Part shown: positions 15,121 to 59,457 of the stretch, piece after piece
How the letters are laid out: the number at the start of each line of letters is the position of its first letter
How positions within the stretch are numbered: position 1 is the stretch's first letter
IMG/VR virus record: IMGVR_UViG_3300048438_000153
Coordinates: 62,001-126,000 of that record
Reading direction: 5' to 3' (one strand)
Length of the DNA stretch: 64,000 nt
Notes under the pieces: generated by a model
What the model was told of the DNA's origin: nothing
The model's input: the letters and a program-made list of their open reading frames with translations, nothing else
Database searches by the model: none
Position numbers and translations under genes: made by a program

Positions 15121-15630
15121 TTAGGGGGCTTCAAGTACTGCGATACAATCGCCCGATGAAGGATACCTTCTTGCTAAGGATGTCCAGACCCGCCTTGCCT
15201 CGTTTGAGGTCACGCCATCCATGCAATAGTGGGGTACAAAGAGGAATGGCTTGCGCCCATTGTCTTTCCAACCCTCTCCCATACACTTCAGATATAGGCT
15301 CTTGCCTATTCCTTGATTTTGATATTCTGAGTTAAGTTCGCTTTCGTTCATGATAAGCACTGTCACCTCACCTCCCCTACCACGAAGAGAGGGAAACTCT
15401 TGGAGTAGGATTCTCACATCACGAATGCAAGGTGAGTTTGTCAGATCATTAGAACTAGTGAGGTCAAAGGTTGCTAGACTGGCATTGATGAGCCCCACTA
15501 CCTTTGACCTCTCACCCGTAGTTCTTTTATAAAGAACTATGTAGAAGTGGTCTCCATCTGTTTCTCTGACATAAACAAGAGAAGAAGACGCTGACAGGTA
15601 CATAGAGGCTACTCTCTCGCAAGGCTTCAC
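15121..15630 (-). CDS. GNAT-like fold protein with RVASMYL leader
   Basis: EYQNQGIGKSLY matches the Q/RxxGxG motif A. Also TSNEARRVWTSLARRYPS. Confidence 0.6.
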   Translation of the reverse strand: MKPCERVASMYLSASSSLVYVRETDGDHFYIVLYKRTTGERSKVVGLINASLATFDLTSSNDLTNSPCIRDVRILLQEFPSLRGRGGEVTVLIMNESELNSEYQNQGIGKSLYLKCMGEGWKDNGRKPFLFVPHYCMDGVTSNEARRVWTSLARRYPSSGDCIAVLEAP

Positions 15631-17314: not shown

Positions 17315-17716
17315 ATGGGCGCAGGAGTCTTATTACAGAAAGATGGGAGGGTTCTCCTCCTCAAGAGAAATAGAAGAAACGACCAATGGGGAGGATATTG
17401 GAACTGTCCTGGCGGAAGCTCAGAGATGGGAGAGTCTCGCTATCAGACCGCTCTCAGAGAAATGAATGAAGAGATAGGAGAGACGCCCCCTTTTAGGGTC
17501 TATGACCACATAGACACAAGAGGCTACACGCTCTTTCTAGCTGACGTGGACTACTTTTTCGCACCCACGCTCAACGAAGAACACTCTGAATGGAGGTGGT
17601 TCGAGAAATCAAGTGTTCTCTCTCTGCCTCTACACCCTAAAGATAGGAAGCCGATCAACCACCTGTTCAGGAAAGAAATAAAGCCCCCTCAGCCCATCGC
17701 GCCACCTAAGACTTAG
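17315..17716 (+). CDS. Nudix hydrolase
   Basis: Nudix box GGSSEMGESRYQTALREMNEEIG; also LNEEHSEWRWF. Confidence 0.92.
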   Translation: MGAGVLLQKDGRVLLLKRNRRNDQWGGYWNCPGGSSEMGESRYQTALREMNEEIGETPPFRVYDHIDTRGYTLFLADVDYFFAPTLNEEHSEWRWFEKSSVLSLPLHPKDRKPINHLFRKEIKPPQPIAPPKT

Positions 17717-20080: not shown

Positions 20081-20401
20081 ATGAACGAATGGGTCGTATA
20101 TGTCATTCAGAGTCAGCAACCTCGAAAGACAGCAAGTGGAAAGCCTACTGAGGGATTCTTCTACGTTGGGTGTACTACAGATGTTAGCCGTAGACTGAGA
20201 CAACACAACGGAGAAATAAGAGGTGGGGGTAAATATACATCAAAGCATAGACCTTGGAAGCTCATGTGTACCTATGGCACATACGCTAACAGATCTGAAG
20301 CTATGAAAGCAGAGTTAGCTCTTAAGAAGAAGCGAGGTAAGGCTAGGTTATACTGGACAGAGGAACAGTCTAAATGGTGCAGAGGCAAGAACCTCATTTA
20401 A
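20081..20401 (+). CDS. GIY-YIG nuclease, SLX1-like
   Basis: VVYVI...FYVGCTTDVSRRLRQHNGEIRGGGKYTSKHRPW...AMKAE. Confidence 0.88.
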   Translation: MNEWVVYVIQSQQPRKTASGKPTEGFFYVGCTTDVSRRLRQHNGEIRGGGKYTSKHRPWKLMCTYGTYANRSEAMKAELALKKKRGKARLYWTEEQSKWCRGKNLI

Positions 20402-21233
20402 GCTCTCTCACTTTGCCTTTCTTAAAAGAGGGCTCTATATCCCGTGTTTCGTATCGACCCTCTTCATTCCAACTTAGCTCTGTATAAAAGTATCTACCAT
20501 CAGCCTCAAAAGTAAGCTCTAAACCATCGGGATCTCTGTACAGGTCGAGATCTACCTTCTCAAATTTAGTCTGTATAGGTAAGCCATGTAGAGAAAGATA
20601 GTCTTTTAAAGCGGTTTCCAACTCTTCTGAGGTGACGTAAATATCATCTTCTCTATCTAACTCTCTCTGCATAAGAATGAGCATAGAGAAGAAACCAATA
20701 CCTCCCCCCGCTCTCTTCTCAAGAGACCCTGAATTCTTAGAGAGTAGCGCCTTGAGCTTCTCGTAGATCTCGTTGTTATTCTTACGATAGATCTCTCCTG
20801 AATCTGTGTGGAGAGAAAAGCGAGTGTCGCCATGTTGGAAACTATATATATTCCCAATGCCTCCCATACGTCTCCCACCACCTAAACTTGGGGATCTTCC
20901 CGTAGACCTTGCTCTCTGCATTAAGAACAGCGAAGGGTTCGCGCTTTTGTAATATCCGTCGTAGACCCTCTCTAAGTCTTGTATACACTTCCCTACGAAA
21001 TGGAAATGAACTCCATGAAATCTTACGTCCATCGTTATCTTCTTCTTGTCAGATAAGTCGATAGAAACATCAGAAACACCTCTTGTCGCTTTGACGTGGC
21101 TCTCTAGAAGTTTTTGCTCGCTCTCAAGAGTTACCTCTTCTCGACCCTTAAAAAGACCGAAGATCGCCTGCTTTTCGAGGCTTGCTACTCTCATCTCAAG
21201 GTAGTTGACTATTTCTGAAGCTGTTCTTCTCAT
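20394..21233 (-). CDS. hypothetical protein with MRRTASEI leader
   Basis: Leader MRRTASEIVNYLEMRVASLEKQA. The first domain is similar to that of 36865-37959. Confidence 0.7.
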   Translation of the reverse strand: MRRTASEIVNYLEMRVASLEKQAIFGLFKGREEVTLESEQKLLESHVKATRGVSDVSIDLSDKKKITMDVRFHGVHFHFVGKCIQDLERVYDGYYKSANPSLFLMQRARSTGRSPSLGGGRRMGGIGNIYSFQHGDTRFSLHTDSGEIYRKNNNEIYEKLKALLSKNSGSLEKRAGGGIGFFSMLILMQRELDREDDIYVTSEELETALKDYLSLHGLPIQTKFEKVDLDLYRDPDGLELTFEADGRYFYTELSWNEEGRYETRDIEPSFKKGKVRELK

Positions 21234-28261: not shown

Positions 28262-28698
28262 TGATCTACAGGCGAGACGGACTCATCTTCACGAAGTTCA
28301 CAGACCCTCATTGGGCGAATCCTAAAGTAGCTCGGATTATGCCCACCCATGAAGGGGGTTCTTGGGGATCTTTCTTAGAGCTGAAAGACACCGAGTGGGC
28401 TCGATTCATTGATGAGGTGTCTCCCGAGTCAATAGAGAGAGCACTACAGGGCGACTCTACGCCCCTAATGAAAGAGGGTCTGCGCGACCCTAGAGGATGC
28501 CTGAAGAGATCCCCTCTTGAGAGAGAGTGCGCCGACGCGAAAGGGTGTACCTCATTTAAGAAATCAGTGTGTTCGTCTGCCTCGAAAAAGACACCTGAGT
28601 GCTTCGCTATTTCTAGGGAGTTACCCCCCTCAGTTCGAGTCCTTCTTTCTGCGTGGAAAGAAGGCTATTATGTAGTCAGAGAAAGGATCAAGACATGA
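28261..28698 (+). CDS. hypothetical Cys-containing protein
   Basis: Operon ORF with coupled stop/start and 5 Cys. Confidence 0.6.
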   Translation: MIYRRDGLIFTKFTDPHWANPKVARIMPTHEGGSWGSFLELKDTEWARFIDEVSPESIERALQGDSTPLMKEGLRDPRGCLKRSPLERECADAKGCTSFKKSVCSSASKKTPECFAISRELPPSVRVLLSAWKEGYYVVRERIKT

Positions 28699-29336
28699 GA
28701 GCTTTAAGCCCGTCTAATCGTAGGGTCTACCCTAACCAACCACAAAACAGCTCAGGCAAGTTGAGCAATAACTCTGAGTACTACGGAGACTTGACGGTCG
28801 CAGATAACAACATCTACCTCTACCAAGACATCACTCCGAAAGCGATGATGGAGCTTGGTATTGCGATCAAGAGCCTGAACAATCAGATTATCTCTCTCAT
28901 CAGTGAGCTAGAGATGTCGAGCGCGCCCACTATCCACCTCCACATCAACTCAGGTGGAGGGTGCGCTTTCAGTGGTCTCGCAGGAGCGAGCCATATCCTT
29001 AACTCTCAAATTCCTGTATCCACCTACGTCGAGGGAAGAGCGGCTTCAGCCGCTACTATTCTTTCTAGCGTGGGCGCGCACAGGTACATCACCGAACACA
29101 GCTTCATGCTAATCCATCAAGTCTCGACAGGTGTGTGGGGGACTTACGAAAACTTGAATGACGAGAAAGAAAGCATGGACTCTCTCATGGAGATGCTTGA
29201 ATCTATTTACCTCAAGCACACCAAGATGAAGAAGAAACAGCTCAAGCAACTCTTAAAGAGGGATCTTTGGATGAACCCTGAGAAATGCTTGGAGCTCGGG
29301 CTTGTTGACGAGATCATCAAGTACGAGCGCACTTGA
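28695..29336 (+). CDS. clpP: ClpP-family serine protease
   Basis: LHINSGGG, AASAAT (catalytic Ser), MLIHQ (His), RDLWM...ELGLVDEI. Start at the ATGA overlap, 28695. Confidence 0.9.
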   Translation: MRALSPSNRRVYPNQPQNSSGKLSNNSEYYGDLTVADNNIYLYQDITPKAMMELGIAIKSLNNQIISLISELEMSSAPTIHLHINSGGGCAFSGLAGASHILNSQIPVSTYVEGRAASAATILSSVGAHRYITEHSFMLIHQVSTGVWGTYENLNDEKESMDSLMEMLESIYLKHTKMKKKQLKQLLKRDLWMNPEKCLELGLVDEIIKYERT

Positions 29337-29385
29337 GTTTTCTTTCTACATCCTTATCTATGTCAACAGCTATGGGAGAAAGAAC

Positions 29386-29736
29386 ATGAAAAGAACAGCA
29401 TCCGAAATTCTCAGTGACCTCGACAGGCGACTCGCACGTTTAGAAAGGACAGCATCAAGAGGTATAAGTGACGGCACTACAGAAGAGCTTCTTGACCGCA
29501 TCAACGACGAATACACCGAGTGGGTTGGGTGGCAATACCCGACGACTCTTAACCAAAGAAAAGACGGCGTTACCCTCGTTTCAGTCGAGGACTACTACGC
29601 AGTAATATGGGTCGGCTTCGGTGAGGGCGAAGACGAGATCATTGACATCACAAAGAATATGAGCAGAGCGAAGAGAATCTATCAGTCATTGAAGTTTGAC
29701 CCTATTCGCTACCCCCACTATCGCTTTAACACCTGA
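29386..29736 (+). CDS. hypothetical protein with MKRTASEI leader
   Basis: RBS ggagaaagaacATG; leader MKRTASEILSDLDRRLARLERTAS. Confidence 0.7.
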   Translation: MKRTASEILSDLDRRLARLERTASRGISDGTTEELLDRINDEYTEWVGWQYPTTLNQRKDGVTLVSVEDYYAVIWVGFGEGEDEIIDITKNMSRAKRIYQSLKFDPIRYPHYRFNT

Positions 29737-36868: not shown

Positions 36869-37959
36869 ATGCTCCAACCTATAGGGACGTATTTATCTTC
36901 AAGCCTCACGCCGTTGTAGGAGTACTGTTTCTTCTGAGGACCTATATACCTATCTCTTGTAAACTCTCTGTCAGAGTCTTCTATATACTCCTTAAGTTTA
37001 CGTCTCTCATGATCAGTCATCTTTCTTTTCTTCGGCTTATTGTCAACGTAGATGAGCTTCTTTTTGAGGACTTGCCTTAAGAAAGAGTAAGCGAGGTCAC
37101 TGTGGAGTGTGTTCCTTGCCTTCCTACCGTATGTCTCCTCTATAATGTCCGTCACCTCGTCAGCGTCAACAGCGAGGTGGGCGCTATCCGCCCAATCGTA
37201 AAGGTCTGAAGCGCCTTTTAAGAATGTCTTAATTTCAGACGAGTCAGAAAGACTAGCGAGCTTGAAATACACTTCGACCCCTCTGTACTGAAAGCAAATC
37301 GTATGGCTCTTTTCTTTTAAGAAAGAAAAGCCATGCCTCTTGAGGAGTTCATTTGATCTAAGGGTGTCTTGATACTCGGGCTTACTTTGATACATAGACT
37401 CAGAGTTCCATCTCTGATAGTATTCAGGAAACTCAGGGTACGCGCTCATCTTGTCGAGCCGAGCGATTCTCCCTCTAGAGCTATTCCTTTCTCCCCCTTC
37501 TAAATCGAGTAACTCCGTGAGCCCAATAACAGTAGAAAGAACAGAATAAAGCCCCTTTGTGGTGGAGATCACGACTGATTTCTCAAGTCCTCTTCTGTCA
37601 ATCTCATACCTAGTGATGGGGATCTGCCCCGACCTCAAGCCTGTGGGTCTAATTTTCGAGTCATAAACTCCGAATCTCTCTGTTTCGTCGTGAGTAACCT
37701 TTCCGTTAAAAACGAAAATCTCCCCCCGAAAGATAAGATTGATTCTGAGACCCCCTTTTTTTGAGATAGAGACATCGACTCGATCAACGTCGTCAAGGTT
37801 CGCTTTTATCGCGCCCTCAATCGACTCTTCTTCTTCTCTAGTGTAGCTTTTAAAGAGGTTAAGAAACCCTGACTCTGTTTCTGAAGCAAAGTGATCACCC
37901 TCAAGTCGGGCGACCCTGATCTCTAGGTCGGAAAGGATTTCTGAAGCTGTTCTTCTCAT
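36865..37959 (-). CDS. hypothetical protein with MRRTASEI leader
   Basis: Leader MRRTASEILSDLEIRVARLE, plus an internal RIARLDK. Confidence 0.7.
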   Translation of the reverse strand: MRRTASEILSDLEIRVARLEGDHFASETESGFLNLFKSYTREEEESIEGAIKANLDDVDRVDVSISKKGGLRINLIFRGEIFVFNGKVTHDETERFGVYDSKIRPTGLRSGQIPITRYEIDRRGLEKSVVISTTKGLYSVLSTVIGLTELLDLEGGERNSSRGRIARLDKMSAYPEFPEYYQRWNSESMYQSKPEYQDTLRSNELLKRHGFSFLKEKSHTICFQYRGVEVYFKLASLSDSSEIKTFLKGASDLYDWADSAHLAVDADEVTDIIEETYGRKARNTLHSDLAYSFLRQVLKKKLIYVDNKPKKRKMTDHERRKLKEYIEDSDREFTRDRYIGPQKKQYSYNGVRLEDKYVPIGWSI

Positions 37960-47682: not shown

Positions 47683-48354
47683 ATGAGAACAATCACAGCA
47701 AGAGTCGCCACAAAGTTCTTAAAGAAAGCAGCGGAAAGTCTTGAGATACACATCTATGACTTCGATGGAACTCTGTTCCGTAGTCCTGAAGCTCCTGAGT
47801 GGTGGAGTAAAAGAAGATATGGTCAGTGGCACTCCAACCAATCTTCATTGGGTCAGCCCTTTGTGCCTAACAACCCTTCTTCAGACTATTGGATTAACGG
47901 CGTAGTAGAGGAAGCAAAGAAGTCCATAGCAGACTTGAATACTTGGGCAGTCATGTGTACAGGACGCATCGACACAGGAGCTCTCAGATACAGAGTGGCT
48001 GAGTTACTGAGGCAAGAGGGTCTTGATTTCGATCAGAACTTTCTTAACGACACAGGTAGGCTGACAAGACCCTACAAGAAAGTGACTCTAATCGAACTCC
48101 TGAAGCAGTTCCCACAGGTCAAGAAAGTCGTTGTGTGGGAGGACACTCAGAAAAACCTCGACGCGCTCGAAAGCATCTGCGACAGGATCGGGATCGAGTT
48201 TGAAGGGAAGCTCATTTCTGAGAGGCTTCTCTCTTCAAACCACATCTCAGAGGATGAATACATAGACTTTCTTAGAGGAGAGCTCTCCGCTAAAGAGTTC
48301 ACTCAGATCTATAAGGCTCTACAGAAGAGTAGAAAGAGAAAGCAAGAATTATGA
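47683..48354 (+). CDS. HAD-superfamily phosphatase (Swiss-Army-Knife RNA-repair type) with RVATKFL leader
   Basis: IYDFDGTLFRSP, MCTGR, YKK, WED. Confidence 0.8.
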   Translation: MRTITARVATKFLKKAAESLEIHIYDFDGTLFRSPEAPEWWSKRRYGQWHSNQSSLGQPFVPNNPSSDYWINGVVEEAKKSIADLNTWAVMCTGRIDTGALRYRVAELLRQEGLDFDQNFLNDTGRLTRPYKKVTLIELLKQFPQVKKVVVWEDTQKNLDALESICDRIGIEFEGKLISERLLSSNHISEDEYIDFLRGELSAKEFTQIYKALQKSRKRKQEL

Positions 48355-48671
48355 GAAAGACAGCCTCTTCAAAGAGAGTCGCAAAGATGTACTTCTTAGC
48401 GAGCACAAACTTGCCTCTCTTAGAGGAAGCCTTACCAAACACCTTCTCAGAAATCGAGCCCTTTAACCGAGTCTCTTGTAGTCACGACATTATGGAGAGC
48501 CTCAAGGCTGAGAAAGAGTTCAACCAAGAGACTCTCTTAAGGGTCTTGTCTGAGTACACTCAAGTAGATACCAACCTTGTCATGGCTGATGTCTCTCACT
48601 TATTCTCAGACGTGGGAGTAGCTCAGAAAGAAAAGCTCTTATCAGCTCTCACCACAGATAGAGAGCTGTAG
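48351..48671 (+). CDS. hypothetical protein with MRKTAS-RVAKMYF leader
   Basis: Leader motif; ATGA overlap. Confidence 0.6.
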   Translation: MRKTASSKRVAKMYFLASTNLPLLEEALPNTFSEIEPFNRVSCSHDIMESLKAEKEFNQETLLRVLSEYTQVDTNLVMADVSHLFSDVGVAQKEKLLSALTTDREL

Positions 48672-49451
48672 AGTGAGGTAGGTAGAAAGAGAGTTAAGCT
48701 CTTTCACTACCTTGAAGGGGTCGAACTTAAGACGACGATTATCACCTTTAAGTCTAGAAAGAGGCTTTCGGAGTTTTTTCTGAACCTCTTGAGCCATTGA
48801 CTCTTCAAGCTTTGACGTAAGCGCGAAGGCTGACTCAAGATCCTCGATCAAGTCTTGACCAACTTGACCTTGCTCTGCGTCAAGAACAGCCTCTTCAAGT
48901 GCTCTCTTAAGCTTCATAAGAACAGGCTTGCAAGAGATGACTGATTGGTTCGCCCACGAGCCTGCGTGAGACTCTAGACCCACAGGATACTGACCGAGAG
49001 GGAGCTTCCTGTTGTTTGGAGCGCGGTGGTAGTCTCCAAAGGCAGAAATATAACCCTTCTTAACCTTACTTAGCTCAAGGCGTTGAAGCTCGTACTTTGC
49101 ACCCGCGAGGTTCTTGAAGGTATCGCGTCTCTCTTGGAAACGAGGCCCAAGACGACCATACCTCTTGATGAGTGTGTAGCCCCCGACATTCTGAGGGTTC
49201 TGAACGATCAGCATCTCGTAATACTTAGACTGATTCTTCTCGCTATCAATCTTGTAAAGCATGGAGGCTTCCCCCTCCCTTGCTTTCTGACGTGTAAGAC
49301 CCTCAGATTTGAGGTAGGGCTTACCCGCAGCAGTCTTATTGATTTGTTGAGAGGCGCGCTTCGCCATAGCCTGACGAACATAAGCTCTTTTCTCTAGATA
49401 CTCGATGCGGTCTTCAAGGGCTGTCAGATTTTCTGAAGATAACCTATACAT
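48642..49451 (-). CDS. WGR-domain protein
   Basis: KIDSEKNQSKYYEM...LIKRYGRLG...A..EL..L..SKVKKGY. Confidence 0.75.
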   Translation of the reverse strand: MYRLSSENLTALEDRIEYLEKRAYVRQAMAKRASQQINKTAAGKPYLKSEGLTRQKAREGEASMLYKIDSEKNQSKYYEMLIVQNPQNVGGYTLIKRYGRLGPRFQERRDTFKNLAGAKYELQRLELSKVKKGYISAFGDYHRAPNNRKLPLGQYPVGLESHAGSWANQSVISCKPVLMKLKRALEEAVLDAEQGQVGQDLIEDLESAFALTSKLEESMAQEVQKKLRKPLSRLKGDNRRLKFDPFKVVKELNSLSTYLTLQLSICGES

Positions 49452-50396: not shown

Positions 50397-51095
50397 TCAG
50401 TCCTCGTGAGTGTGGTAGCCCTCTCCGAAGAGAAAGTAACGGTGGAGGTCAGAGAGCAGAGCGTGGGCGTGTGAAATCTTATCCTCAACCCAATCTTCTA
50501 GCTCCTCACCCTCATGTACTTGACCTTCAAGGGTGCGGAGAAAGTCATCCATCTCTCGGATATTCTGAAGGCTCATGTAAGAGCCTCTGTGATGCCCCCC
50601 TCCTTGCTTCACAAATCGGGAATCGAGATCTCTTTCTAGCTCGTCTTCTTCCTCAATCATATCTACGAGCTGATCCGCGAGGTCATCAATCAAGCCCTCC
50701 TCTTCAGCGATCTCATAGAGATCATAATCTGACGCGGTGCGCTTGTAGAACTCACCCTCAGAAATGAAGCCGTCATCGTCGTCATCGAGAAGATCAAAGC
50801 CCTCTTCCCACTCGCGCTCAGAAATCAAACCGTCGCCATCAATGTCGAGGTCGTCGAAGTGAGGGTTATCCCACTCTTCTTCTGAAATAAAACCAGAGTT
50901 ATCTGTGTCGATCTGATCGAAAGCGTACTCCCACTCTTCGGGAGAAAGGCGTCCGTCATCGTCTTCGTCCATGTCTCGGAAAGAAGATGATGAAGTCTTA
51001 GTCTCACCGTAGTCGTGCCTCATGCGTAGAGGCTGTGTAAGAAAGGGGCTTCTCTCGCGAGAGAAATCAGGTGAGAATTTATGTTTGTAGCTCAT
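50397..51095 (-). CDS. four-EF-hand (calmodulin-like) protein with an extra C-terminal domain
   Basis: Loops DEDDDGRLSPEE, DTDNSGFISEEE, DIDGDGLISERE and DDDDDGFISEGE. Confidence 0.85.
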   Translation of the reverse strand: MSYKHKFSPDFSRERSPFLTQPLRMRHDYGETKTSSSSFRDMDEDDDGRLSPEEWEYAFDQIDTDNSGFISEEEWDNPHFDDLDIDGDGLISEREWEEGFDLLDDDDDGFISEGEFYKRTASDYDLYEIAEEEGLIDDLADQLVDMIEEEDELERDLDSRFVKQGGGHHRGSYMSLQNIREMDDFLRTLEGQVHEGEELEDWVEDKISHAHALLSDLHRYFLFGEGYHTHED

Positions 51096-51112: not shown

Positions 51113-51880
51113 TTAGTGGTTGTTGATGTAGGCAGATGCAACGCGCTCAATCATTGCATACCTCTCTCCGCTTGGGCTCTTCTTATGTTTGGGCTTACGC
51201 GATCTACCCTTTGCCACATCTTTACTTCTGTTGTGGTGCTTACCCTTACCTGATGACCCCACGCCCCCATCAAACATACCCTGAGTGCTCGGGTCGCGGA
51301 ACTTAGGTATGGTGTTAGGGTCTTTTTTCTTTTTCTTCTTAGAAGCCGTCTTAAGACTCGCCATCACCTGACGTCCGTCTTCGGTGATCTCACGATCAAG
51401 CATGACCGCAGGCCGACGAACAAGGTAGTTAGGCCATTTCTCAAACCACTTAGAATAAAACTCGTCTTCCCCTACCTCTCTAACAGTCTTATCCGGGTTC
51501 GGGATGTTCGGGTCAGCGACGTGAACGATGTAGTTACCGCGCTCTCCTGTGACATCAAAGATCAGGCTCGCGTGACTCCAATCACGACCCTCGGGATTCC
51601 ACGCAATTAAGACAGGCTTTCCCTGATCAGTCCATGCTTTCACCTGAGAAAGAGTAGCAGGTGTGGTGAGCGTAGCCCGACACCCAAAGTACTGAGCGCA
51701 AGCTAAGACTTCTTCCCATCGAGCACCCTTCATAGGTTGCGCGCCGATGACCTTGTTTACCTGATCTTCGTTGCAGTCAACACCGAGCGCGTTGAGAGCC
51801 ATACACGTCGAGGTAGAGACACAGCTAAACTGAGATCTCTGTCTGATGGGCTTTACGTTAGCCTTCGCTGTTCTTCTCAT
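51113..51880 (-). CDS. C39-like cysteine peptidase with MRRTA leader
   Basis: RQRSQFSC (Q..C), WSHASL (H), VADPN (D). Start placed at 51880 from the RBS and the TAGATCGTCTAT motif at 51918-51929. Confidence 0.8.
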   Translation of the reverse strand: MRRTAKANVKPIRQRSQFSCVSTSTCMALNALGVDCNEDQVNKVIGAQPMKGARWEEVLACAQYFGCRATLTTPATLSQVKAWTDQGKPVLIAWNPEGRDWSHASLIFDVTGERGNYIVHVADPNIPNPDKTVREVGEDEFYSKWFEKWPNYLVRRPAVMLDREITEDGRQVMASLKTASKKKKKKDPNTIPKFRDPSTQGMFDGGVGSSGKGKHHNRSKDVAKGRSRKPKHKKSPSGERYAMIERVASAYINNH

Positions 51881-51954
51881 GGGAAGCACCTTTCTTAGTC
51901 TTTCCTCTAACCCTCTTATAGACGATCTACCAAGGGACGACATTCTCCGCATAT

Positions 51955-51987
51955 TGTGCGGAGAATAGACCTCTTAATCTCCGCACA
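51955..51987. promoter_or_regulatory. 10-bp inverted repeat in a divergent intergenic region
   Basis: tgtgcggaga ... tctccgcaca. Confidence 0.5.
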
Positions 51988-52047
51988 CTCGAAAAGCATC
52001 TTGCCTCTCCCTAAATACGATATGTACCCCTCACAAGGAGGTAAGTC

Positions 52048-52405: not shown

Positions 52406-53182
52406 ATGAACGAGCAGAAAGCTGGATGTGAAGCCATCGTGGAAGCGATGAAGGAAGACGCTAAGAAAAAAGGCTCTAGGGCAAAAAATATCGACCATTG
52501 GAAGTCCTTTGCCTGCCAAGCCATCGGAATCTCCAAGATGGGGTCAGCGCGGTGGCTGATGGTCATCAACTACGGCGTGAGAGAAGGCTATTTTAAGATT
52601 GTAAACGTCAAGGAAAAAGAAACCCTCTCCTTAGACACAGAGACACCCCCCCAAGTCTCTCTCATCGAAGAAGATCCCGAAGTCGAGACTCCTGAGCCTC
52701 CCGAAACGCCAAAGCGCGACAAGAGAGGATTCATGCCCTCTGACTACATCAAGGGTACAGGGATGCTTAAAGCAGAAACACCTAGAGCCAAGTCAATTCG
52801 AGAGAACGCGCACCGCTCAGACCTCATCCCTCAAAAGGGAGATCTCCTATGGGCGATCCGACCCGATAACTCCGTCTTCCATTCTGAAGTAGAAGAGGTC
52901 AGCATCGGAGTCCACGTCACGCCCCTCAATAAGAAAGATGGGCATTGGAGCTACGTCTCCTCTAATGACGTGTATGAAGATCAGAAAGAAGCTAAGAAAG
53001 AAGCGGATCGCAGAAGGTCAGAGAAAGAGAAAAGGTCAGCTAAGACTTATTGGTCTGCCGAGCTCGTGAATCGCGACGAATACGCTCTCTTCAAAGAATA
53101 CCTTGATAACAGAGAAGCCTTCTTCGCCTACTTGAAAAAGTTCTCCGAGGACACTGAGCTTGAGGGCAATCTCTTAAGCTAA
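52406..53182 (+). CDS. hypothetical protein
   Basis: Long ORF co-oriented with the preceding gene. Confidence 0.65.
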   Translation: MNEQKAGCEAIVEAMKEDAKKKGSRAKNIDHWKSFACQAIGISKMGSARWLMVINYGVREGYFKIVNVKEKETLSLDTETPPQVSLIEEDPEVETPEPPETPKRDKRGFMPSDYIKGTGMLKAETPRAKSIRENAHRSDLIPQKGDLLWAIRPDNSVFHSEVEEVSIGVHVTPLNKKDGHWSYVSSNDVYEDQKEAKKEADRRRSEKEKRSAKTYWSAELVNRDEYALFKEYLDNREAFFAYLKKFSEDTELEGNLLS

Positions 53183-55528
53183 TATCTGACCTCTAGGGAT
53201 GAGCCCGAGTGCTTGATACGTCTTACCCACCAAAGGGTGGAGATCAGAGGCGCAGAGGATAGCGCCTGATACCCCCGTTGCGGTAGACCCCGCATTTAAG
53301 ACTACAGAAGGTGCTTCTAAAGACACTTTACCCACTGACCTAATGCCTACCCCTAGTGAACCTGTAATCGCCACGTTACCTACCGCAGACTGAACACTCG
53401 CGTCTCCCAAGATCGCCTTGACCGTCACGCTCTCAGGAGAGGTGTCAACTGAGTTGCCCGCAGACCTCAGAGTAACACTCCCCACAGTAGATGACTGACT
53501 AATGCTTCCTAAGTTAACGCTCGTTGATCTGTCCCCTACTGTGAGGCTCGTCTGTTCCACATCTCCAAAGGCGACTGTTTCTTTCCTGACAGTACCGCCC
53601 ACCGATCCTGTCGCGGGCGACGACCCAAACGTCTCCTCAAGACCCTGACTCTTAATTGGCAATCCGTCTGTAGGACCTCCGTAGACTACTCTCTTGTTAC
53701 CTGTCACTGTCTCAGTCATGTCCGACGTCTCTAAAGTGAGCGATTTACCGCTCGCCAATGAGAAAGAGTCCTGACTTGAGAATCTGAAAGACTTAACGTC
53801 TGTGAAATCCACGATAGGAGCTGAGAGCTTAACCACACTAGAAGACTGTATTGAGATGCCTCGGCGCGCCTCAATGTTAACGCCCATCTGAGCTTCTTTC
53901 GCATCTTGGTTAGACGCGCCCTCATTAGGTGTTATGTAGCCCCCCGCAGAGATATTGACCGCGCCCTTTGGAGAAGTGACGTTGACACCTAGTGAGTTAC
54001 CGCTGTCTGACCCACCCACTAGGTTAATCTGAGCAGATTTCACCCTTAAATCGCCATCGAGAGTCACCTCTCCCCCACCGTTTACTTTCGCCTGTAGAGC
54101 TTCAGTAGAAAGACTAGAAATCTGCGCCTTCAAAGCTCCATTCTTAGTGAAAGAAACGAATGAGTCAGAGAGCTCTTCACTCAGAGGGTTCACCTTGATA
54201 AGTGTCGCGCACTGACTCCCGACCTCTCCCGTAACAGAGGGGACGAGAACTCCCTGACCGCTCGCGAAAGAAACACCGAGAGGGATGCCGTAGCTCTGAC
54301 GACCTACCCCAAAAGGATCATTACCTACAACACTCCCTAAGACAAACTCTACAAGAGGCAGACCACTCGCTAGGCGCTCAGCGTCGAAGCCGTCTGTTTG
54401 CTCCGTCACAGGGAGCGTGCCGTTAGACGTGTGAGATACCTCTACCCTATACTCTGAAAGAGCAGAGGATATCGGTTTCCCTGACTTGGCTTTCCTGTCT
54501 CTCCCTCTCTCGTCCATGCGGAGAATCGACTTGCCCCCATAGATTAGTTTACCTGAGTTAGCTCCCGTGACCTGACCTGACTCGTTAATAAGATTGGCTT
54601 CAAAGAAGAAAGAGAAAGGATTGAGATGGGGGTCAAGAGTGCCTCCCTCCTTCTCGAACTCTGTCTTGCCCTCTGAGTCCTTAAGAAAGATCTTATTTGG
54701 AAGGAACTTTCCGAGTGGGTCTGTGCTCGGCTCTGAAGGGTTCAACGTCGGGCTCGATTGAGGAGATCCGATTGAATCCTCCCCGAGATAAACCTGCATA
54801 CCCCCATCCCAATTGAAGCCGTCAGAAATCATCTCTTGAGGGATATGCTGTGCGTCTCTCTGAACCATCCCCGAATAGACTCGCGCTCCCGCCATCGAGT
54901 GGAACTGCTGAAGCGACCTCATCACAATCGCTTGGTCTTGATCTCTTAGTCTGATCTCGTTGGCTCTCCTGTTCGTGAGCAAAACACTCTCGTCAAGAAA
55001 GAGATCCGCACCCTGAGCTGACGAGGCGAGGATGTTCCCCTGATCCATGTGGCGCATCTTAAATCTTATTCTCTGCGCCACCTGAGAAACAGCCTGTCTG
55101 TCTTTCAGGTTGTTAAGAACCTGTTCCTCTGTAGTGAAGTCCTGAACAGGAAGCCAATCATGGCCGTAGAAAGGAGTTCTAGGCATCCAAGTCAGAATAA
55201 TAGGCTGTTTCCTACCTGCCTTATCCCCACTGTTGGCGACCCAACCTACCATACAGTAGTCGCCGACCTGTGGGATCGCCCCTAAGAAATGCCTAGACCC
55301 CGCTGAGGCCGCTGAAATCTCAACGCCCGTATACTTGGGTCTTTGATGCTCTCCGTGAACCACCTCAATGTTACACCTGAGCTCAGGGTGATAGACATCC
55401 GTGACTCGCGCCAAGCACAGAGAAAGAGCTGACCACCCATAACTAGGGTTGCTTTGCTTAAGCGCACTATTTCTGAGCCTCTCACTATCTCCCGCAGGGA
55501 AGTGAGTCATCTTACTGTACTTATCCAT
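53174..55528 (-). CDS. baseplate central spike (gp5/VgrG/gpV-like)
   Basis: N-terminal OB-fold-like LARVTDV...GAIPQVGDYCMVGW; C-terminal Ser/Gly/Val-rich beta-helix repeats; downstream of the hub. Confidence 0.7.
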   Translation of the reverse strand: MDKYSKMTHFPAGDSERLRNSALKQSNPSYGWSALSLCLARVTDVYHPELRCNIEVVHGEHQRPKYTGVEISAASAGSRHFLGAIPQVGDYCMVGWVANSGDKAGRKQPIILTWMPRTPFYGHDWLPVQDFTTEEQVLNNLKDRQAVSQVAQRIRFKMRHMDQGNILASSAQGADLFLDESVLLTNRRANEIRLRDQDQAIVMRSLQQFHSMAGARVYSGMVQRDAQHIPQEMISDGFNWDGGMQVYLGEDSIGSPQSSPTLNPSEPSTDPLGKFLPNKIFLKDSEGKTEFEKEGGTLDPHLNPFSFFFEANLINESGQVTGANSGKLIYGGKSILRMDERGRDRKAKSGKPISSALSEYRVEVSHTSNGTLPVTEQTDGFDAERLASGLPLVEFVLGSVVGNDPFGVGRQSYGIPLGVSFASGQGVLVPSVTGEVGSQCATLIKVNPLSEELSDSFVSFTKNGALKAQISSLSTEALQAKVNGGGEVTLDGDLRVKSAQINLVGGSDSGNSLGVNVTSPKGAVNISAGGYITPNEGASNQDAKEAQMGVNIEARRGISIQSSSVVKLSAPIVDFTDVKSFRFSSQDSFSLASGKSLTLETSDMTETVTGNKRVVYGGPTDGLPIKSQGLEETFGSSPATGSVGGTVRKETVAFGDVEQTSLTVGDRSTSVNLGSISQSSTVGSVTLRSAGNSVDTSPESVTVKAILGDASVQSAVGNVAITGSLGVGIRSVGKVSLEAPSVVLNAGSTATGVSGAILCASDLHPLVGKTYQALGLIPRGQILA

Positions 55529-58500
55529 CAGCTACCCCCTTTTAATTTTTCCTGTCGGACAACCCAATCAAGAGCCTTTTCTTCAATCTCTTTCTTATAC
55601 TGATTGACGATGTAGTTATCGTCTAGGTCATTAGAGGCCACAGTGAGGAAGTTACCCTCATCAGCTAAGAAAATCTCAATGTCACTTGTGTCTCCTCGAC
55701 ACTCACATGACGCACCACCCCGCGACTGTGGCCTTATGTCAGAAATACGTCTCGGCGTGTTCGCAATCACCAGATCATTCTTCTGATCCATGAAACCGTT
55801 AGCTAGAGCTGATTTCAGACTCTCAGCCTTGTTCTCTCCCTGTAAAACATTTCCTGTGAGGCGCTGATACGCATCAGCGACCTTACCCTCTCCACCGCTC
55901 GCCTCAATTCTCTTAACGACCGTCGAGGCGAGGTCTTGAAAGATCTTCTTTCTGTCCTTACCCTGTACTTTGTTGTGAAGTGCTCTGAGAAACTGATCAA
56001 CCTCTTCTTCTACGAGAAGTCTCGTCACATCGCTTCTTAAGAGACGGTCAAAACCCCCTCCCTGATCTATGTCCAGACCTCTCCCGTACTGATACGCTCC
56101 AAATAGCTCATAACCCTTCTCGTCAGAAACAGGGAAGATAGGGCTCTTCCAAGTATCTTCATAGTAAGTGATAGGCTTTTTAACATAGGATATGTTGCCC
56201 TTGGAACTCACGCGCACTCTTAGCTTGAGGTACACATCGTTCAATAGCTTTCTAACCTCGTTGGGGTTCATCACCTCATTCTTTCCGAAGGCGACACCAC
56301 CCCAATCATTCTTAAGGTTATTTACGAGTAGAAGCGCGGTGTTCTCCGCAACCTCATACTCAAGTAATGCGTCGATGATCTCACCATCTCCCACAACAAC
56401 CCTCTCTTTTTTAACTACCTTTGTCACCCTCTTGAAATCACCTGATTTCTTAGCCTTACCCTTGTAGAAAGAAGCCGAAGCTTTCTTCCCTGTGAGGTTC
56501 TTTCCTTTAAGTACTTTTCTGAAGTGAACTACGAGCTGTGAGAGAATGAGCCCATACAAAGTCGCGCCGTTTATCTTGCCATTGATTTTTGTGATACGTC
56601 TCGTGCCTTTTCTCTTGATCCCATGCTCTTGGAAAGAAAGGAACAGAATATCTTTAGTCGGCACTGTAACTGCCTGATTGTCTGAATACCTCGTCCTCGT
56701 GTAAAGACCCCTCACCACAGCACCCTCTCCAAAGCGCACTCGGTTTCCACCTCCAACTTCAGTCTCTTTGAGCACCATGTTTGTCTCTGTAGAATCTATT
56801 CTTTCTTCTTCAAGATAAGCCTGTTCGTCCTCAGTCTGTCTGAACACTCTTGGACCTTGATCTTCAGGGTTTGGTGACGAAGACGAATAGTACCTGTAAT
56901 AGCCGGGTTGGTTCGGGTTGAAGCTAGCCTTTTTGTTAGAAAGAAGAGTAAGAATAGAAGCCGTACTCCCTGGCTTTTGGATCGACCCATCCGTCTGCGC
57001 TTTGTTCTCCACCGCCTCAATCAAGTCTACAATCGTAGCAAGACCCACTGTCGAAGCCCTTGTATCAGTCTTAGCTTGATCCCCCCTTAGCTTCTCTCTC
57101 GCTTCAAGGTATGCTTTCTCAATCTTCTCGTTCACTTGACGAGCATCCTTACGCCCCCTCTTCCTCACCTTAGAAGCACTTCTACGAGCATTATTAAGCT
57201 CCCCTAAAGCCCCTGAAAGACTGACCTCTCCGGGAAGTAGCCCTGTGTATGTCCTACTATATGCCTTTCTTGTCACCTTCCCTGTGGCTTTGTCTTTCAG
57301 CTCTTTCTTAGAAACTGTGTGCTTTGTGAATTTAAGTTTCAGCTCTCTTCCATCACTTGTTGTAAGCACCCAAGGACCTTTGTAAAGAGTGACATCATCT
57401 ACCTCTCTCGTCTCCCCCGACCCTATAGTTTTAGAGTCGTTTGAAGCGAGCTTAAGTACGCCGAGCCTCAGCCCATACTTAATCAGCATATTCCGATACA
57501 TCTTGCGCGTATTAGAACCTAGACCTGAAGTCGCGCCCTTCAGCATATCAAGCCCGAAAGCAATCGCTGAGGGGTCAGGATGTTCAGGGTCAAGTGCCAT
57601 CACCACATTAGGGAAACCGACTGTCTTGTAAAAGCCCTCGTCGTCCTTTGCGATCAAACTCTTAGGTGGGAAGAGAGGGTTCGCGAGATTGATCGAGTCT
57701 ATGCCGTCTTTAGCGGGATCTCCAGGGGGTAGGAACTTCTTTCTGCGCGCAGTAAGGGTTAAGCCTGTCGTACAGTCTCCGCCGAAAGAGAAAGAATGAG
57801 AAACAGAGGTCACATAATAAAAACAGTCTATATGCTCAACATAGACAGGGTATCCAGGTTTAAGCTCAGGGCGCATAGGGATACTTAAAGAACACCCATT
57901 CACGTTGGTGTTCGATTTCTCTAGCTCCACCACAGAGGCAAAGAAAGCACTCCGCGCTGTGTTGAAGAAAGTAGTGTCCATTTCTAAGGGCTTCCAACCA
58001 TACTTAGCCACGAGCCTGTAGTCCACATAAGTACCCTTCACTCCCCACGTTCCCTCCATAGGTAAGCCCGCTGTATTTCTGAACATACCGCCTTTCGTGA
58101 TCGCATAGGTGTACTCAGGCTCTTGATGCTCGAAAGAAATGTCGAGGATGTCTTCTCTCTTAATACGGTAGACTCGGCTTGAACTCGTGTCCATGTTGTA
58201 GAAAGGAGGCTTGAAAACCAAGTCTCCGTCCACGTCCTGATAAAACTCGTAACCCACTTTCTCAGCCACTGTGTCTGCGATGGATTGTTTAGTCTCAAAC
58301 TGACTAGAGAAAAGCTCGACATTTCCGAGCGCGCCTATATCGGTGATGAAAGCCTTGAGCTCTGTAGAGAGCATCCCCAAACCGCCTCTGCCTGTGTCGT
58401 CAAGCTCCACCGCGAAGAGAAGGTCTGCTGCTCTTAAGAGTCTAGCGTTCTCATCACTCTCGAAAAGGCCGAGTGCCTGAGCCACCCCGAGCTCCCCACC

Positions 58501-59457
58501 CTTCGTTACTTTCCCATTGTAATGGATGTTGTGCTGACCCTTGATGATCTTTCTTAAGTCAGACCCCTTTCTCTTTCCCCTAGAGGGATCGCCTAGAAAA
58601 GCCGTCTGTAAGCTAGAGAACATACTCCCTGAAGCCCCATACATTCTTAGACCATAAAGCCCCTGTGAGAAACGGTTCTCCCAATAGCGGAGTGTCTGAG
58701 AAAAGAGACTCCTACCTCCCGCGTTCTTGCTCTTTTGATTGCTCGATTTACTGAACACCCACTCAGCATCCCCTGCGGAACCCCCTGAGTCTCTGTAGAG
58801 GTCATAGATAATCTGATGAGGAGTCATGTTCGTGTAGACGTGTCCGTCGAGCCTCATCGAACCTCTAGACTCAGCAGGCGTAGAAGCGAGGTAGGCCGCG
58901 TTGGTGTTGATCTTTTGATTCTGCCAAAAGTGAAGCAACCCACTACAGCTAAGACTTGCAGAATAAAAGCCCCCACTGAAGTTGTAAGAAACACTCGTCA
59001 CTACACCGTGAAAGACAGGGTAGTAAGGGCGCATCCCCACCTTAGAAAGATCATATTCTTCACTACTTGCTCCGTTGACATAGGTGTCGCCTTTAGGACT
59101 CAAGCCCTCTACCTCAAAGAAGCCCCTGTAGTAGACGTTGATTTCCACTCCTGTAGAGAAAAGAAACTCACCATCCTTAAATATCGAGTCTCCGTAGTGA
59201 GAAGGGATCGACATCTCGATGCTCGAAGAAGAGTCGCCTGACGAGACGCCCGCGTTCACAGAAACAGATGTGATGAAAGCCTGAAAGTCGATCTTATTCC
59301 TACACTCTAGACAGCCCGCGATTGTTGTGTCTCCGTTCAAGAGCACGATGCAGTCGGGAGTCCAAGAAATGATCTTCCTATGCTTGTTGAGAATATCTTG
59401 TGACCAATTGCCCGCTGAGGGCCTACCCTCTAAGATGTTGTTCGCCATATTGTCCAT
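55528..59457 (-). CDS. baseplate hub protein (gp27/gpD-like, 1309 aa)
   Basis: VFHGVVTSVS, YEFYQDVDGDLVFKPPFYN, MRPELKPGYPV, YVTSVSHSFSFGG. Confidence 0.75.
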   Translation of the reverse strand: MDNMANNILEGRPSAGNWSQDILNKHRKIISWTPDCIVLLNGDTTIAGCLECRNKIDFQAFITSVSVNAGVSSGDSSSSIEMSIPSHYGDSIFKDGEFLFSTGVEINVYYRGFFEVEGLSPKGDTYVNGASSEEYDLSKVGMRPYYPVFHGVVTSVSYNFSGGFYSASLSCSGLLHFWQNQKINTNAAYLASTPAESRGSMRLDGHVYTNMTPHQIIYDLYRDSGGSAGDAEWVFSKSSNQKSKNAGGRSLFSQTLRYWENRFSQGLYGLRMYGASGSMFSSLQTAFLGDPSRGKRKGSDLRKIIKGQHNIHYNGKVTKGGELGVAQALGLFESDENARLLRAADLLFAVELDDTGRGGLGMLSTELKAFITDIGALGNVELFSSQFETKQSIADTVAEKVGYEFYQDVDGDLVFKPPFYNMDTSSSRVYRIKREDILDISFEHQEPEYTYAITKGGMFRNTAGLPMEGTWGVKGTYVDYRLVAKYGWKPLEMDTTFFNTARSAFFASVVELEKSNTNVNGCSLSIPMRPELKPGYPVYVEHIDCFYYVTSVSHSFSFGGDCTTGLTLTARRKKFLPPGDPAKDGIDSINLANPLFPPKSLIAKDDEGFYKTVGFPNVVMALDPEHPDPSAIAFGLDMLKGATSGLGSNTRKMYRNMLIKYGLRLGVLKLASNDSKTIGSGETREVDDVTLYKGPWVLTTSDGRELKLKFTKHTVSKKELKDKATGKVTRKAYSRTYTGLLPGEVSLSGALGELNNARRSASKVRKRGRKDARQVNEKIEKAYLEAREKLRGDQAKTDTRASTVGLATIVDLIEAVENKAQTDGSIQKPGSTASILTLLSNKKASFNPNQPGYYRYYSSSSPNPEDQGPRVFRQTEDEQAYLEEERIDSTETNMVLKETEVGGGNRVRFGEGAVVRGLYTRTRYSDNQAVTVPTKDILFLSFQEHGIKRKGTRRITKINGKINGATLYGLILSQLVVHFRKVLKGKNLTGKKASASFYKGKAKKSGDFKRVTKVVKKERVVVGDGEIIDALLEYEVAENTALLLVNNLKNDWGGVAFGKNEVMNPNEVRKLLNDVYLKLRVRVSSKGNISYVKKPITYYEDTWKSPIFPVSDEKGYELFGAYQYGRGLDIDQGGGFDRLLRSDVTRLLVEEEVDQFLRALHNKVQGKDRKKIFQDLASTVVKRIEASGGEGKVADAYQRLTGNVLQGENKAESLKSALANGFMDQKNDLVIANTPRRISDIRPQSRGGASCECRGDTSDIEIFLADEGNFLTVASNDLDDNYIVNQYKKEIEEKALDWVVRQEKLKGGS

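What the first reader, a model, noticed from the sequence alone, without database searches (positions are those of the whole stretch)
51113..51880. C39-like cysteine peptidase bracketed by the same RTA/KTA motifs: candidate processing enzyme
The Q-C-H-D catalytic domain begins just after MRRTA and ends just before LKTAS, followed by a basic tail and a terminal IERVASAY. C39 peptidases are established leader-peptide removers. It may be the leader protease (self-maturing) or simply another cargo. ClpP at 28695 or an out-of-window prohead protease are the alternatives.
Basis: partly seen in the sequence, partly recalled or inferred. Interest (0 to 1): 0.65.

Follow-up and report, generated by a model that had tools for sequence, protein, structure and literature searches.

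The report
Tagged C39-like peptidase, huge phage
This gene encodes an intact C39-like cysteine peptidase that is one of the best-conserved core genes of a widespread group of 275-620 kb phages. It carries the same short address tag as about 25 other proteins of this phage, so it looks more like a tagged passenger than the enzyme that removes the tags.

Summary
Window 51113-51880 (-) encodes a 255-aa protein with a C39-like papain fold and conserved Gln/Cys/His/Asp. It is followed by KTAS, a basic tail and a terminal ERVASAY.

The processing-enzyme reading is not supported.
- The N-terminal [KR]-x-A-[KR]-A is a near-invariant part of the domain (46 of 47 homologues). It is also present in phages that lack the leader.
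- KTAS plus ERVASAY form a split copy of a portable tag, [KR]TAS + R[IV]Axx[YF]. This tag is strongly enriched in the proteome, lies mostly at protein ends, and swaps ends between orthologues. That is how a docking peptide behaves, not a cut site.
- In the 11 long leaders (MRRTASEILxDLExRIARLE), RTA lies at the start, so cutting there would not remove the leader.
- Five complete or partial genomes keep the peptidase at 50-62% identity with no detectable leader.
- A head-maturation protease candidate sits in the head module outside the window. A ClpP-like protease lies at 28653-29336.

My best reading is a tagged, probably virion-sorted peptidase that works with the adjacent EF-hand protein, which is fused to it in one relative. 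Its substrate is unknown, and a tag-processing role is not excluded.

The parts
51113..51880 (-). C39-like cysteine peptidase gene, 255 aa, starting at Met25 of the longer frame
   Evidence: All homologues start here. The Shine-Dalgarno-like site is shown.
51356..51868 (-). Peptidase domain (residues 29-199 of the long frame): Gln38 at 51839-51841, Cys44 at 51821-51823, His127 at 51572-51574, Asp147 at 51512-51514
   Evidence: AF2 pLDDT is above 90 here. Fold matches reach Z 17-19 to PeiR, PCAT1, LahT150 and ComA. Cys44 aligns with PeiR Cys90.
51341..51352 (-). KTAS, the first half of the bipartite tag, directly after the domain
   Evidence: [KR]TAS occurs 28 times against 3.0 expected. In relatives it sits next to RVASKY as KTASMVERVASKY.
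51179..51340 (-). Basic, low-confidence tail: a K6 run, then the block PKFRDP...GxHxNRxxDVAKGRSRKPKHKK, which is specific to this protein family
   Evidence: No other protein of G000, G002 or G010 carries the block.
51128..51145 (-). RVASAY, the second half of the tag, in a C-terminal helix
   Evidence: The helix has pLDDT about 82. A tag lies next to the domain or at the C-end in 18 of 47 homologues.
51881..51952 (-). In-frame upstream extension of 24 codons, probably untranslated 5' leader; a 10-bp hairpin lies just upstream of it at about 51956-51988
   Evidence: There is no Shine-Dalgarno-like site before 51952. No homologue can be extended this way. The leader profile does not match it. 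The hairpin is shown.
50397..51095 (-). EF-hand protein with four Ca-binding loops followed by RTAS; it starts 17 nt after the peptidase stop codon, so it is probably co-transcribed
   Evidence: Pfam EF-hand families. The gene lies downstream of the peptidase in 21 of 80 loci. EF-hands are fused to the peptidase in L083.
28653..29336 (+). ClpP-like protease, a rival candidate for any processing
   Evidence: PHROG head maturation protease, E 6e-43. Pfam CLP_protease. NCBIfam ClpP-related head maturation protease scores 106 bits, below its cut-off of 120.
29386..29736 (+). Leader-bearing gene overlapping the end of the ClpP-like gene; RTAS occurs on both sides of the leader helix
36865..37959 (-). 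Leader-bearing gene (MRRTASEILSDLEIRVARLE...)
20394..21233 (-). Leader-bearing gene
53174..59457 (-). Two large genes upstream on the same strand, probably tail or baseplate genes. A homologue of the 784-aa one lies near the peptidase gene in 9 of 80 loci.
   Evidence: Weak PHROG baseplate hub hit for the 1309-aa protein. Synteny is shown. Baseplate_J and sheath-initiator genes lie at 2357-6690.

Best explanation
The gene makes a catalytically intact C39-like (papain-fold) cysteine peptidase. It belongs to the core gene set of a large clade of 275-620 kb phages. Its C-terminal KTAS...ERVASAY is a split copy of a portable bipartite tag, [KR]TAS followed by R[IV]Axx[YF]. The same tag sits at the N- or C-end, or at a domain junction, of roughly 25-30 other proteins of this phage. 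The 11 long leaders are that tag with a helix inserted between its two halves. So the peptidase is a client of the tag system.

I infer that the tag is a docking peptide that sorts proteins into the assembling head or virion. On that reading the peptidase travels with them and acts there or after ejection, together with the EF-hand calcium-binding protein encoded 17 nt downstream.

What is shown: the fold, the catalytic residues, the conservation, the tag statistics, the end-swapping of tags and the EF-hand linkage. What is inferred: sorting into the virion, calcium control and the substrate. The substrate could be cell-envelope peptide or isopeptide bonds, as for PeiW/PeiR, or tagged phage proteins.
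For: Fold and active site:
- establish the C39-like fold and the catalytic residues.

Core-gene status:
- The word search gave 488 relatives. More than 80 IMG/VR contigs of up to 618 kb carry the gene.
- The domain is 80% identical in G002 and 61% in G010. That matches the portal (66% in G010) and exceeds the terminase (58%) and the prohead-protease candidate (56%). By my own division of the bit score (238) by a 176-residue domain, about 1.35 bits per residue, it is second only to the major capsid protein in the ranking.

The tag is real:
- R[IV]Axx[YF] against shuffles: 17 vs 2.3 in G000, 8 vs 2.4 in G002, 9 vs 1.4 in G005, 29 vs 6.2 in G009, 15 vs 4.0 in G010.
- 22 of 29 strict tags in G000 lie at protein ends, where about 21% would be expected.

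The tag is portable:
- Orthologues keep a tag but swap the end that carries it.

The tag marks head-module proteins:
- It occurs in large proteins encoded between the protease candidate and the portal.
- An RVAS near the N-end is conserved in the prohead-protease family, with R25 and A27 invariant.

The peptidase carries the tag:
- A tag lies next to the domain or at the C-end in 18 of 47 homologues, for example KTASMVERVASKY.

EF-hand link:
- The EF-hand gene is downstream in 21 of 80 loci and fused in L083.
- The nearest solved sequence relatives, the phage endoisopeptidases of the Pei family, need Ca2+ (PMC4592898).
Against: - No proteomic or biochemical data exist, so virion sorting is inferred only.
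- About half of the homologues show no recognisable tag.
- The EF-hand neighbour is confined to the closer subclade plus one fusion.
- Conservation this strong is unusual for an ejected effector or lysin. It would fit a morphogenetic enzyme with conserved phage substrates, which favours the rival reading.
- Fold and sequence cannot separate a leader peptidase from an isopeptidase. Z is 18-19 for both.
Confidence: 0.42

Rival explanations
1. Dedicated tag or leader-processing protease. The peptidase recognises the [KR]TAS / R[IV]Axx[YF] tag on client proteins and trims it, and also trims its own tail. This would be analogous to C39 peptidases removing double-glycine leaders.
For: - The fold equals that of leader peptidases: LahT150 Z 18.1, PCAT1 Z 18.4.
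- The active site is intact.
- The gene co-occurs with tag enrichment in 5 of the 6 genomes tested, with weak enrichment in the sixth.
- Its conservation rivals that of the portal, as expected for an enzyme with conserved phage substrates.
- It carries the tag itself, which could serve self-processing or co-localisation.
Against: - RTA is at the start of the leader, so a cut there leaves the helix attached.
- No shared motif, and no Gly-Gly, follows the leaders.
- Tags lie a few residues from either protein end and swap ends between orthologues. That suits binding, not cleavage.
- The N-terminal [KR]-x-A-[KR]-A of the enzyme is a near-invariant domain element, also present in leader-less genomes.
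- [KR]TAS is not enriched in G010 although the peptidase is 61% identical there.
- A dedicated head protease candidate exists.
Confidence: 0.2
2. Any processing of tagged proteins is done by another protease: the head-module protease candidate (genome 186675-188093, outside the window) or the ClpP-like protease (window 28653-29336). The C39-like enzyme would be only a substrate or passenger. This reading is compatible with the best explanation.
For: - P0122 hits PHROG head maturation protease at E 1.6e-15. It lies between the portal and the scaffold-like and major capsid genes.
- P0122 is conserved in all five other genomes examined: G002, G005, G008, G009 and G010.
- The ClpP-like gene best matches ClpP-related head maturation proteases.
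- The ClpP-like gene is present in all 6 leader-bearing genomes but in only 1 of 6 leader-less ones.
- It overlaps a leader gene that has RTAS on both sides of the helix.
Against: - The P0122 fold could not be verified: AF2 pLDDT was 49, and there was no Pfam, NCBIfam or PDB match.
- The ClpP-like gene sits among replication genes and scores below the NCBIfam cut-off.
- The ClpP-leader co-distribution is confounded by common descent.
- [KR]TAS enrichment does not track ClpP cleanly: G008 8 vs 3.4 and G009 11 vs 4.8.
- It is not known that the tags are cut at all.
Confidence: 0.3
3. Cell-wall endopeptidase or isopeptidase used as the lysis enzyme (a soluble endolysin), unrelated to the tags.
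For: - The best sequence-profile hit in the PDB is the phage endoisopeptidase PeiR, E 0.0035, with the catalytic Cys aligned. It is also the top structural match, Z 19.1.
- The tail is cationic.
Against: - The genome already encodes an Amidase_2 protein above the Pfam cut-off and a weak SLT-like protein.
- There is no cell-wall-binding domain.
- Endolysins are usually variable and often exchanged between phages, whereas this domain is among the most conserved core segments.
- C-terminal extensions of up to 971 aa and the tags do not fit a soluble lysin.
Confidence: 0.06

Closest known systems
C39 double-glycine leader peptidases of PCAT/AMS exporters (PCAT1, LahT150, ComA)
   Same: Same papain-like C39 fold, with Z 17-18 and rmsd about 2 A over about 135 residues. 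Same order of Gln, Cys, His and Asp. Pfam Peptidase_C39_2 is above its cut-off, and four homologues also pass PF03412.
   Different: It is a free-standing phage protein, not the N-domain of an ABC exporter. No Gly-Gly motif follows the candidate leaders. In the candidate substrates the conserved helix lies after, not before, the proposed cut. PF03412 is below its cut-off for this protein, 13.2 against 22.
Phage pseudomurein endoisopeptidases PeiW/PeiP/PeiR (MEROPS C71)
   Same: Best sequence-profile match among solved structures (E 0.0035), with the catalytic Cys aligned. Also the top structural match, Z 19.1. Both are phage-encoded. The Pei enzymes need Ca2+ (PMC4592898), and this peptidase is linked or fused to EF-hand modules.
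   Different: Identity is only about 20%. There are no N-terminal pseudomurein-binding repeats. The host is unknown. This protein carries tags and variable long tails, and it is a core gene rather than a lysis accessory.
Capsid targeting sequence with the gp21 protease of T4, and propeptides with gp175/gp245 of phiKZ/SPN3US (PMC5694885, PMC7411985, found; not read)
   Same: Many unrelated proteins of one phage share a short terminal peptide. A head-module protease candidate is encoded near the portal.
   Different: Here the tag is bipartite, works at either end and swaps ends between orthologues. No cleavage motif ending in Glu was found. Cleavage is not shown. An extra cysteine peptidase carries the tag.
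Encapsulin cargo-loading peptides (from general knowledge, not tested here)
   Same: Short, portable terminal peptides on diverse proteins that are encoded alongside an HK97-fold shell protein.
   Different: There is no sequence similarity. Binding of this tag to the capsid protein is untested. This is a tailed phage with portal, terminase and contractile-tail genes.

Membership tests
Pfam PF13529 Peptidase_C39_2 (C39-like, clan CA) | Profile score above the curated gathering cut-off | tested here: met
   28.6 bits against a cut-off of 24. Nine of the ten homologues scanned score 25-43 bits and the tenth 22.7, below the cut-off. PF13529 is precomputed for most relatives.
Pfam PF13529 Peptidase_C39_2 (C39-like, clan CA) | Papain-like fold with Gln (oxyanion), Cys, His and Asp/Asn in order | tested here: met
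   AF2 domain pLDDT is above 90. Z is 17-19 to C39 and C71 structures. H127 and D147 are invariant and Q38 and C44 nearly so. Cys44 aligns with PeiR Cys90.
Bacteriocin-processing C39 peptidases (PF03412, PCAT type) | Profile score above the cut-off | tested here: inconclusive
   13.2 bits against 22 for this protein. Four of ten homologues score 22.3-29.4.
Bacteriocin-processing C39 peptidases (PF03412, PCAT type) | N-terminal domain of an ABC exporter | tested here: not met
   The protein is 255 aa and free-standing. No ABC or transmembrane domain was found in it or in ten homologues.
Bacteriocin-processing C39 peptidases (PF03412, PCAT type) | Substrates with an amphipathic leader ending in Gly-Gly (or Gly-Ala/Ser) before the cut | tested here: not met
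   The 11 leaders are followed by unrelated residues with no shared Gly-Gly.
Pseudomurein endoisopeptidases (C71, PeiW/PeiP/PeiR) | Sequence relationship of the catalytic domain | tested here: inconclusive
   Profile E 0.0035 over 83 residues with about 20% identity. Single-sequence E 0.76.
Pseudomurein endoisopeptidases (C71, PeiW/PeiP/PeiR) | N-terminal cell-wall-binding repeats, and cleavage of the Ala-epsilon-Lys bond | not testable with these tools
   The peptidase domain starts at about residue 5, so there is no room for N-terminal repeats. Bond specificity needs an assay.
Phage prohead (head maturation) proteases | Membership of a known prohead protease family, and position in the head module | tested here: not met
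   No PHROG match at all. The fold is that of a cysteine peptidase. The gene lies about 70 kb from the portal and major capsid genes, next to probable tail genes.
Tag-bearing clients of this phage clade (defined here) | R[IV]Axx[YF], often preceded by [KR]TA[SA], at a protein end or a domain junction | tested here: met
   KTAS at residues 201-204 and RVASAY at 270-275 of 279. The same arrangement appears in compact form in relatives. 18 of 47 homologues have a tag next to the domain or at the C-end.

The most novel reading that the evidence does not exclude
This clade of huge phages may run its own protein-sorting system. A portable bipartite tag would mark about a tenth of the proteome for delivery to the head or virion. 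The C39-like peptidase, which is almost as conserved as the capsid and portal proteins, would be the system's dedicated recognition and trimming enzyme, regulated by calcium through its EF-hand partner. That would be a viral counterpart of leader-peptidase or sortase-type sorting systems.
Probability: 0.15. Interest if true: 0.85.

Novelty: new variant of a known kind. Interest (0 to 1): 0.55.

Why it matters
How huge phages choose which of their many proteins go into the particle is largely unknown outside T4 and the phiKZ-like phages.

This locus points to a simple, portable tag that is used across a very widespread environmental clade. The capsid protein stays at least 90% identical across genomes of 31-60% G+C. 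The locus also points to a highly conserved cysteine peptidase that carries the tag.

Two outcomes are possible:
- If the peptidase reads or trims the tag, this would be a new kind of viral sorting machinery and a compact tool for loading cargo into capsids.
- If it is only cargo, it is still a conserved enzyme that these phages probably deliver into their hosts, and its target is worth finding.

Tried and rejected
- **Complex prediction.** I folded the peptidase domain with the first 40 residues of a leader protein. The result was no verdict (score 0.01), which counts neither for nor against binding.
- **Head-protease candidate P0122.** AF2 with 33 sequences gave pLDDT 49, so I ran no fold search on it. 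It had no Pfam, NCBIfam or PDB sequence match.
- **Database searches with the peptidase.** PHROGs gave no family. Megablast of 13 kb against GenBank phages gave nothing. tblastn found only LR745208.1.
- **Upstream ATG at 51952 as the start of a leader-bearing form.** Rejected. It has no Shine-Dalgarno-like site, homologues cannot be extended, and the leader profile does not match it.
- **[KR]TAS as the ClpP-like protease's motif.** The co-distribution is not clean and is confounded by descent.
- **Sole endolysin.** Unlikely, because an Amidase_2 gene is present.
- **Function of tagged proteins.** Pfam scans of ten leader or tag proteins gave nothing.
- **Relatives lacking the peptidase.** A capsid-protein search returned only relatives at least 91% identical, so no control lacking the peptidase was found.
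- **Literature.** Searches found no description of this family or tag.

Full report
**Setting**

The window is bases 62001-126000 of a single 275,102-bp IMG/VR virus record, with a CheckV completeness estimate of 88%.
- It is a contractile-tailed huge phage. Baseplate_J and sheath-initiator genes lie at window 2357-6690.
- Outside the window there is a head module with terminase, portal, a head-maturation-protease candidate (P0122, genome 186675-188093), a scaffold-like protein and a 292-aa major capsid protein.

**The gene**

- The longest frame is 51113..51952 (-), 279 aa.
- Every homologue starts at the position of Met25.
- A GAAAGG site precedes that ATG at a spacing typical for this genome. 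The upstream ATG has no such site.
- A 10-bp hairpin lies just upstream of that ATG.

**The domain**

- Pfam Peptidase_C39_2 is above its cut-off, 28.6 against 24 bits. PF03412 is below its cut-off. PHROGs and NCBIfam give nothing.
- An AF2 model built on 50 sequences has pLDDT above 90 through the domain and 50-60 in the tail. The last helix, which holds ERVASAY, is at about 82.
- Structural matches tie between the phage endoisopeptidase PeiR (Z 19.1), the PCAT1 peptidase domain (18.4), LahT150 (18.1) and ComA (17.1).
- A family profile finds PeiR as the only solved sequence relative, at E 0.0035. The family's conserved Cys aligns with PeiR Cys90, and the score drops for the C90A mutant chain.
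- His127 and Asp147 are invariant. Gln38 and Cys44 are conserved in at least 90% of sequences.
- The enzyme looks active. The fold alone cannot say whether it removes leaders or cuts isopeptide or cell-wall bonds.

**The family**

- The word search found 488 relatives, nearly all unnamed.
- More than 80 IMG/VR contigs carry the gene, many of them 290-620 kb.
- I compared three genomes: this one, G002 (312 kb) and G010 (436 kb). The domain is 80% and 61% identical in the other two.
- In G010 that compares with portal 66%, terminase 58%, P0122 56% and major capsid protein 90%.
- Dividing the bit score for G010 (238) by a 176-residue domain gives about 1.35 bits per residue, my own estimate. That would place it second only to the capsid protein in the ranking. 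This is a core gene, not an accessory.
- The tails after the domain vary from 6 to 971 residues.

**The motifs**

- Eleven genes of this phage begin with the 20-residue leader MRRTASEILxDLExRIARLE.
- A second, shorter motif, R[IV]Axx[YF] (typically RVASRYL), occurs 17 times against 2.3 expected. [KR]TAS occurs 28 times against 3.0, or 18 against 2.6 without the leader paralogues.
- Of 29 strict copies of the short motif, 19 lie within 45 residues of the N-end and 3 within 25 residues of the C-end. Those regions hold 14% and 8% of all residues.
- The two motifs are halves of one module. In relatives of the peptidase they are adjacent, as in KTASMVERVASKY. In G010 the peptidase ends in KTAADRIAARYL.
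- The long leader is the same module with a helix inserted between its halves. In this peptidase the halves are separated by a 65-residue basic insert that no other protein carries.
- Orthologues keep a tag but move it between ends. Examples are g_79713 (N-end) against G002_12477 (C-end), g_200591 (C-end) against G002_259539 (N-end), and g_109581 (N-end) against G010_83979 (C-end).
- The short motif is enriched in five of the six genomes tested, which range from 31% to 60% G+C. It is weak in G008.
- It marks head-module proteins in particular. A conserved RVAS also lies near the N-end of the P0122 family.
- A position-independent terminal peptide is what a docking or sorting tag looks like. 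A cleavage site would not need to sit five residues from a protein end.

**Test of the leader-protease idea**

- RTA lies at residues 3-5 of the leader, so a cut after it would leave the conserved helix on the protein. Nothing conserved, and no Gly-Gly, follows the leader.
- The enzyme's own N-terminal motif is [KR]-x-A-[KR]-A in 46 of 47 distinct homologues, with Thr in 17. It continues straight into the P-x-R-Q...C segment of the domain, so it is a structural element. KTAS directly after the domain occurs in only 4 of 47.
- The leader profile finds 17-33 copies in four close relatives (peptidase 79-85% identical) and only partial matches in G005 (70%).
- It finds no significant match in G006-G010 or in LR745208.1 (50-62%). 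G006 gives only two chance-level matches at E 0.04-0.07. Two of these genomes are rated 100% complete.
- [KR]TAS is not enriched in G010, at 6 against 4.1.
- Two other proteases are available: P0122 in the head module and the ClpP-like protein at 28653-29336.
- The ClpP-like gene is present in all six leader-bearing genomes and in one of six leader-less ones. It also overlaps a leader gene that has RTAS on both sides of the helix. This lead is confounded by common descent and is not matched cleanly by [KR]TAS enrichment.

**What speaks for the leader-protease idea**

- The fold is that of leader peptidases.
- The active site is intact.
- The gene co-occurs with the short tag in the genomes examined.
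- Its degree of conservation suits an enzyme with conserved phage partners.
- I therefore keep a widened form of the idea, a tag-processing enzyme, at about 0.2.

**Context**

- The next gene, 17 nt downstream on the same strand, encodes a protein with four EF-hand loops followed by RTAS.
- An EF-hand homologue lies downstream of the peptidase in 21 of 80 loci. In L083, EF-hands are fused to the C-terminal part of a 1147-aa peptidase homologue.
- The Pei endoisopeptidases require Ca2+ (PMC4592898).
- Upstream lie two large genes. One weakly matches baseplate hub. A homologue of the other, the 784-aa gene, lies near the peptidase gene in 9 of 80 loci.
- The genome also has an Amidase_2 gene and a weak SLT-like gene, so the peptidase is not needed as the endolysin.

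**Verdict**

The best-supported reading is that it is a tagged client of a clade-wide sorting tag, probably carried in the particle and working with a calcium-binding partner. I put this at 0.42. Its substrate is unknown. The [KR]-x-A self-maturing leader-protease model is not supported. A broader tag-processing role remains possible and would be the most interesting outcome.

**What failed**

The complex prediction gave no verdict. The P0122 model was too poor to use. No literature on this family or tag was found.

Noticed in passing
window 20394-21233 (-), 29386-29736 (+), 36865-37959 (-); genome 24935-27843, 132300-142307, 215107-215940 (L002, L005, L010): Eleven otherwise unrelated small proteins start with the same 20-residue leader, MRRTASEILxDLExRIARLE. 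Four close relatives have 17-33 copies each. None was detected in more distant relatives.
   Followed up: yes
window 15121-15630, 17713-20010, 11882-12454 (all -), 48351-48671 (+); many genes elsewhere in the genome: A short portable tag, R[IV]Axx[YF] (RVASRYL-like), sits at protein ends. It is enriched 4- to 7-fold over shuffles in five of six genomes of the clade. It swaps between the N- and C-end in orthologues.
   Followed up: yes
window 48642-49451 (-): A WGR-domain protein starts with a diverged copy of the leader (MYRLSSENLTALEDRIEYLE), by my count 11 of 20 residues identical to the leader consensus. The leader profile search did not pick it up.
   Followed up: partly
window about 51956-51988 (-): A 10-bp GC-rich hairpin lies in the 5' region of the peptidase mRNA, just upstream of the unused ATG at 51952 (z -2.4 against shuffles). 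The in-frame 24 codons between that ATG and the real start look faintly leader-like and are unique to this genome.
   Followed up: partly
window 31835-33346 (-): A eukaryotic-type DNA topoisomerase IB (Pfam Topoisom_I above its cut-off) lies in the replication module, beside SNF2-type and DnaB-type helicases.
   Followed up: no
genome 182994-183872 (L008:11994-12872, -): The 292-aa major capsid protein is 90-97% identical across genomes whose G+C ranges from 31% to 60%, while other core genes are 40-60% identical. It contains an internal RVAR[VI][FY] + MNARDYAD segment, seen in all four capsid proteins printed, that resembles the tag.
   Followed up: partly
genome 136369-137364 (L005:10369-11364, -): An actin/ParM-like protein is 96% identical in G002 and 61% in G010, which places it among the most conserved core genes. 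A relative's locus (L016) carries a gene annotated with Pfam Volactin.
   Followed up: no
window 28653-29736 (+): The ClpP-like protease gene overlaps the start of a leader-bearing gene whose leader helix has RTAS on both sides. The ClpP-like gene is present in all 6 leader-bearing genomes and in 1 of 6 leader-less ones.
   Followed up: partly
protein P0209 (homologue of the head protease candidate): One homologue of the head-protease candidate carries Hint/intein domains (PF07591, PF14890).
   Followed up: no
window 12821-13573 (-): There is a weak PAS-domain match, below the Pfam cut-off, in a 250-aa protein among structural-looking genes.
   Followed up: no
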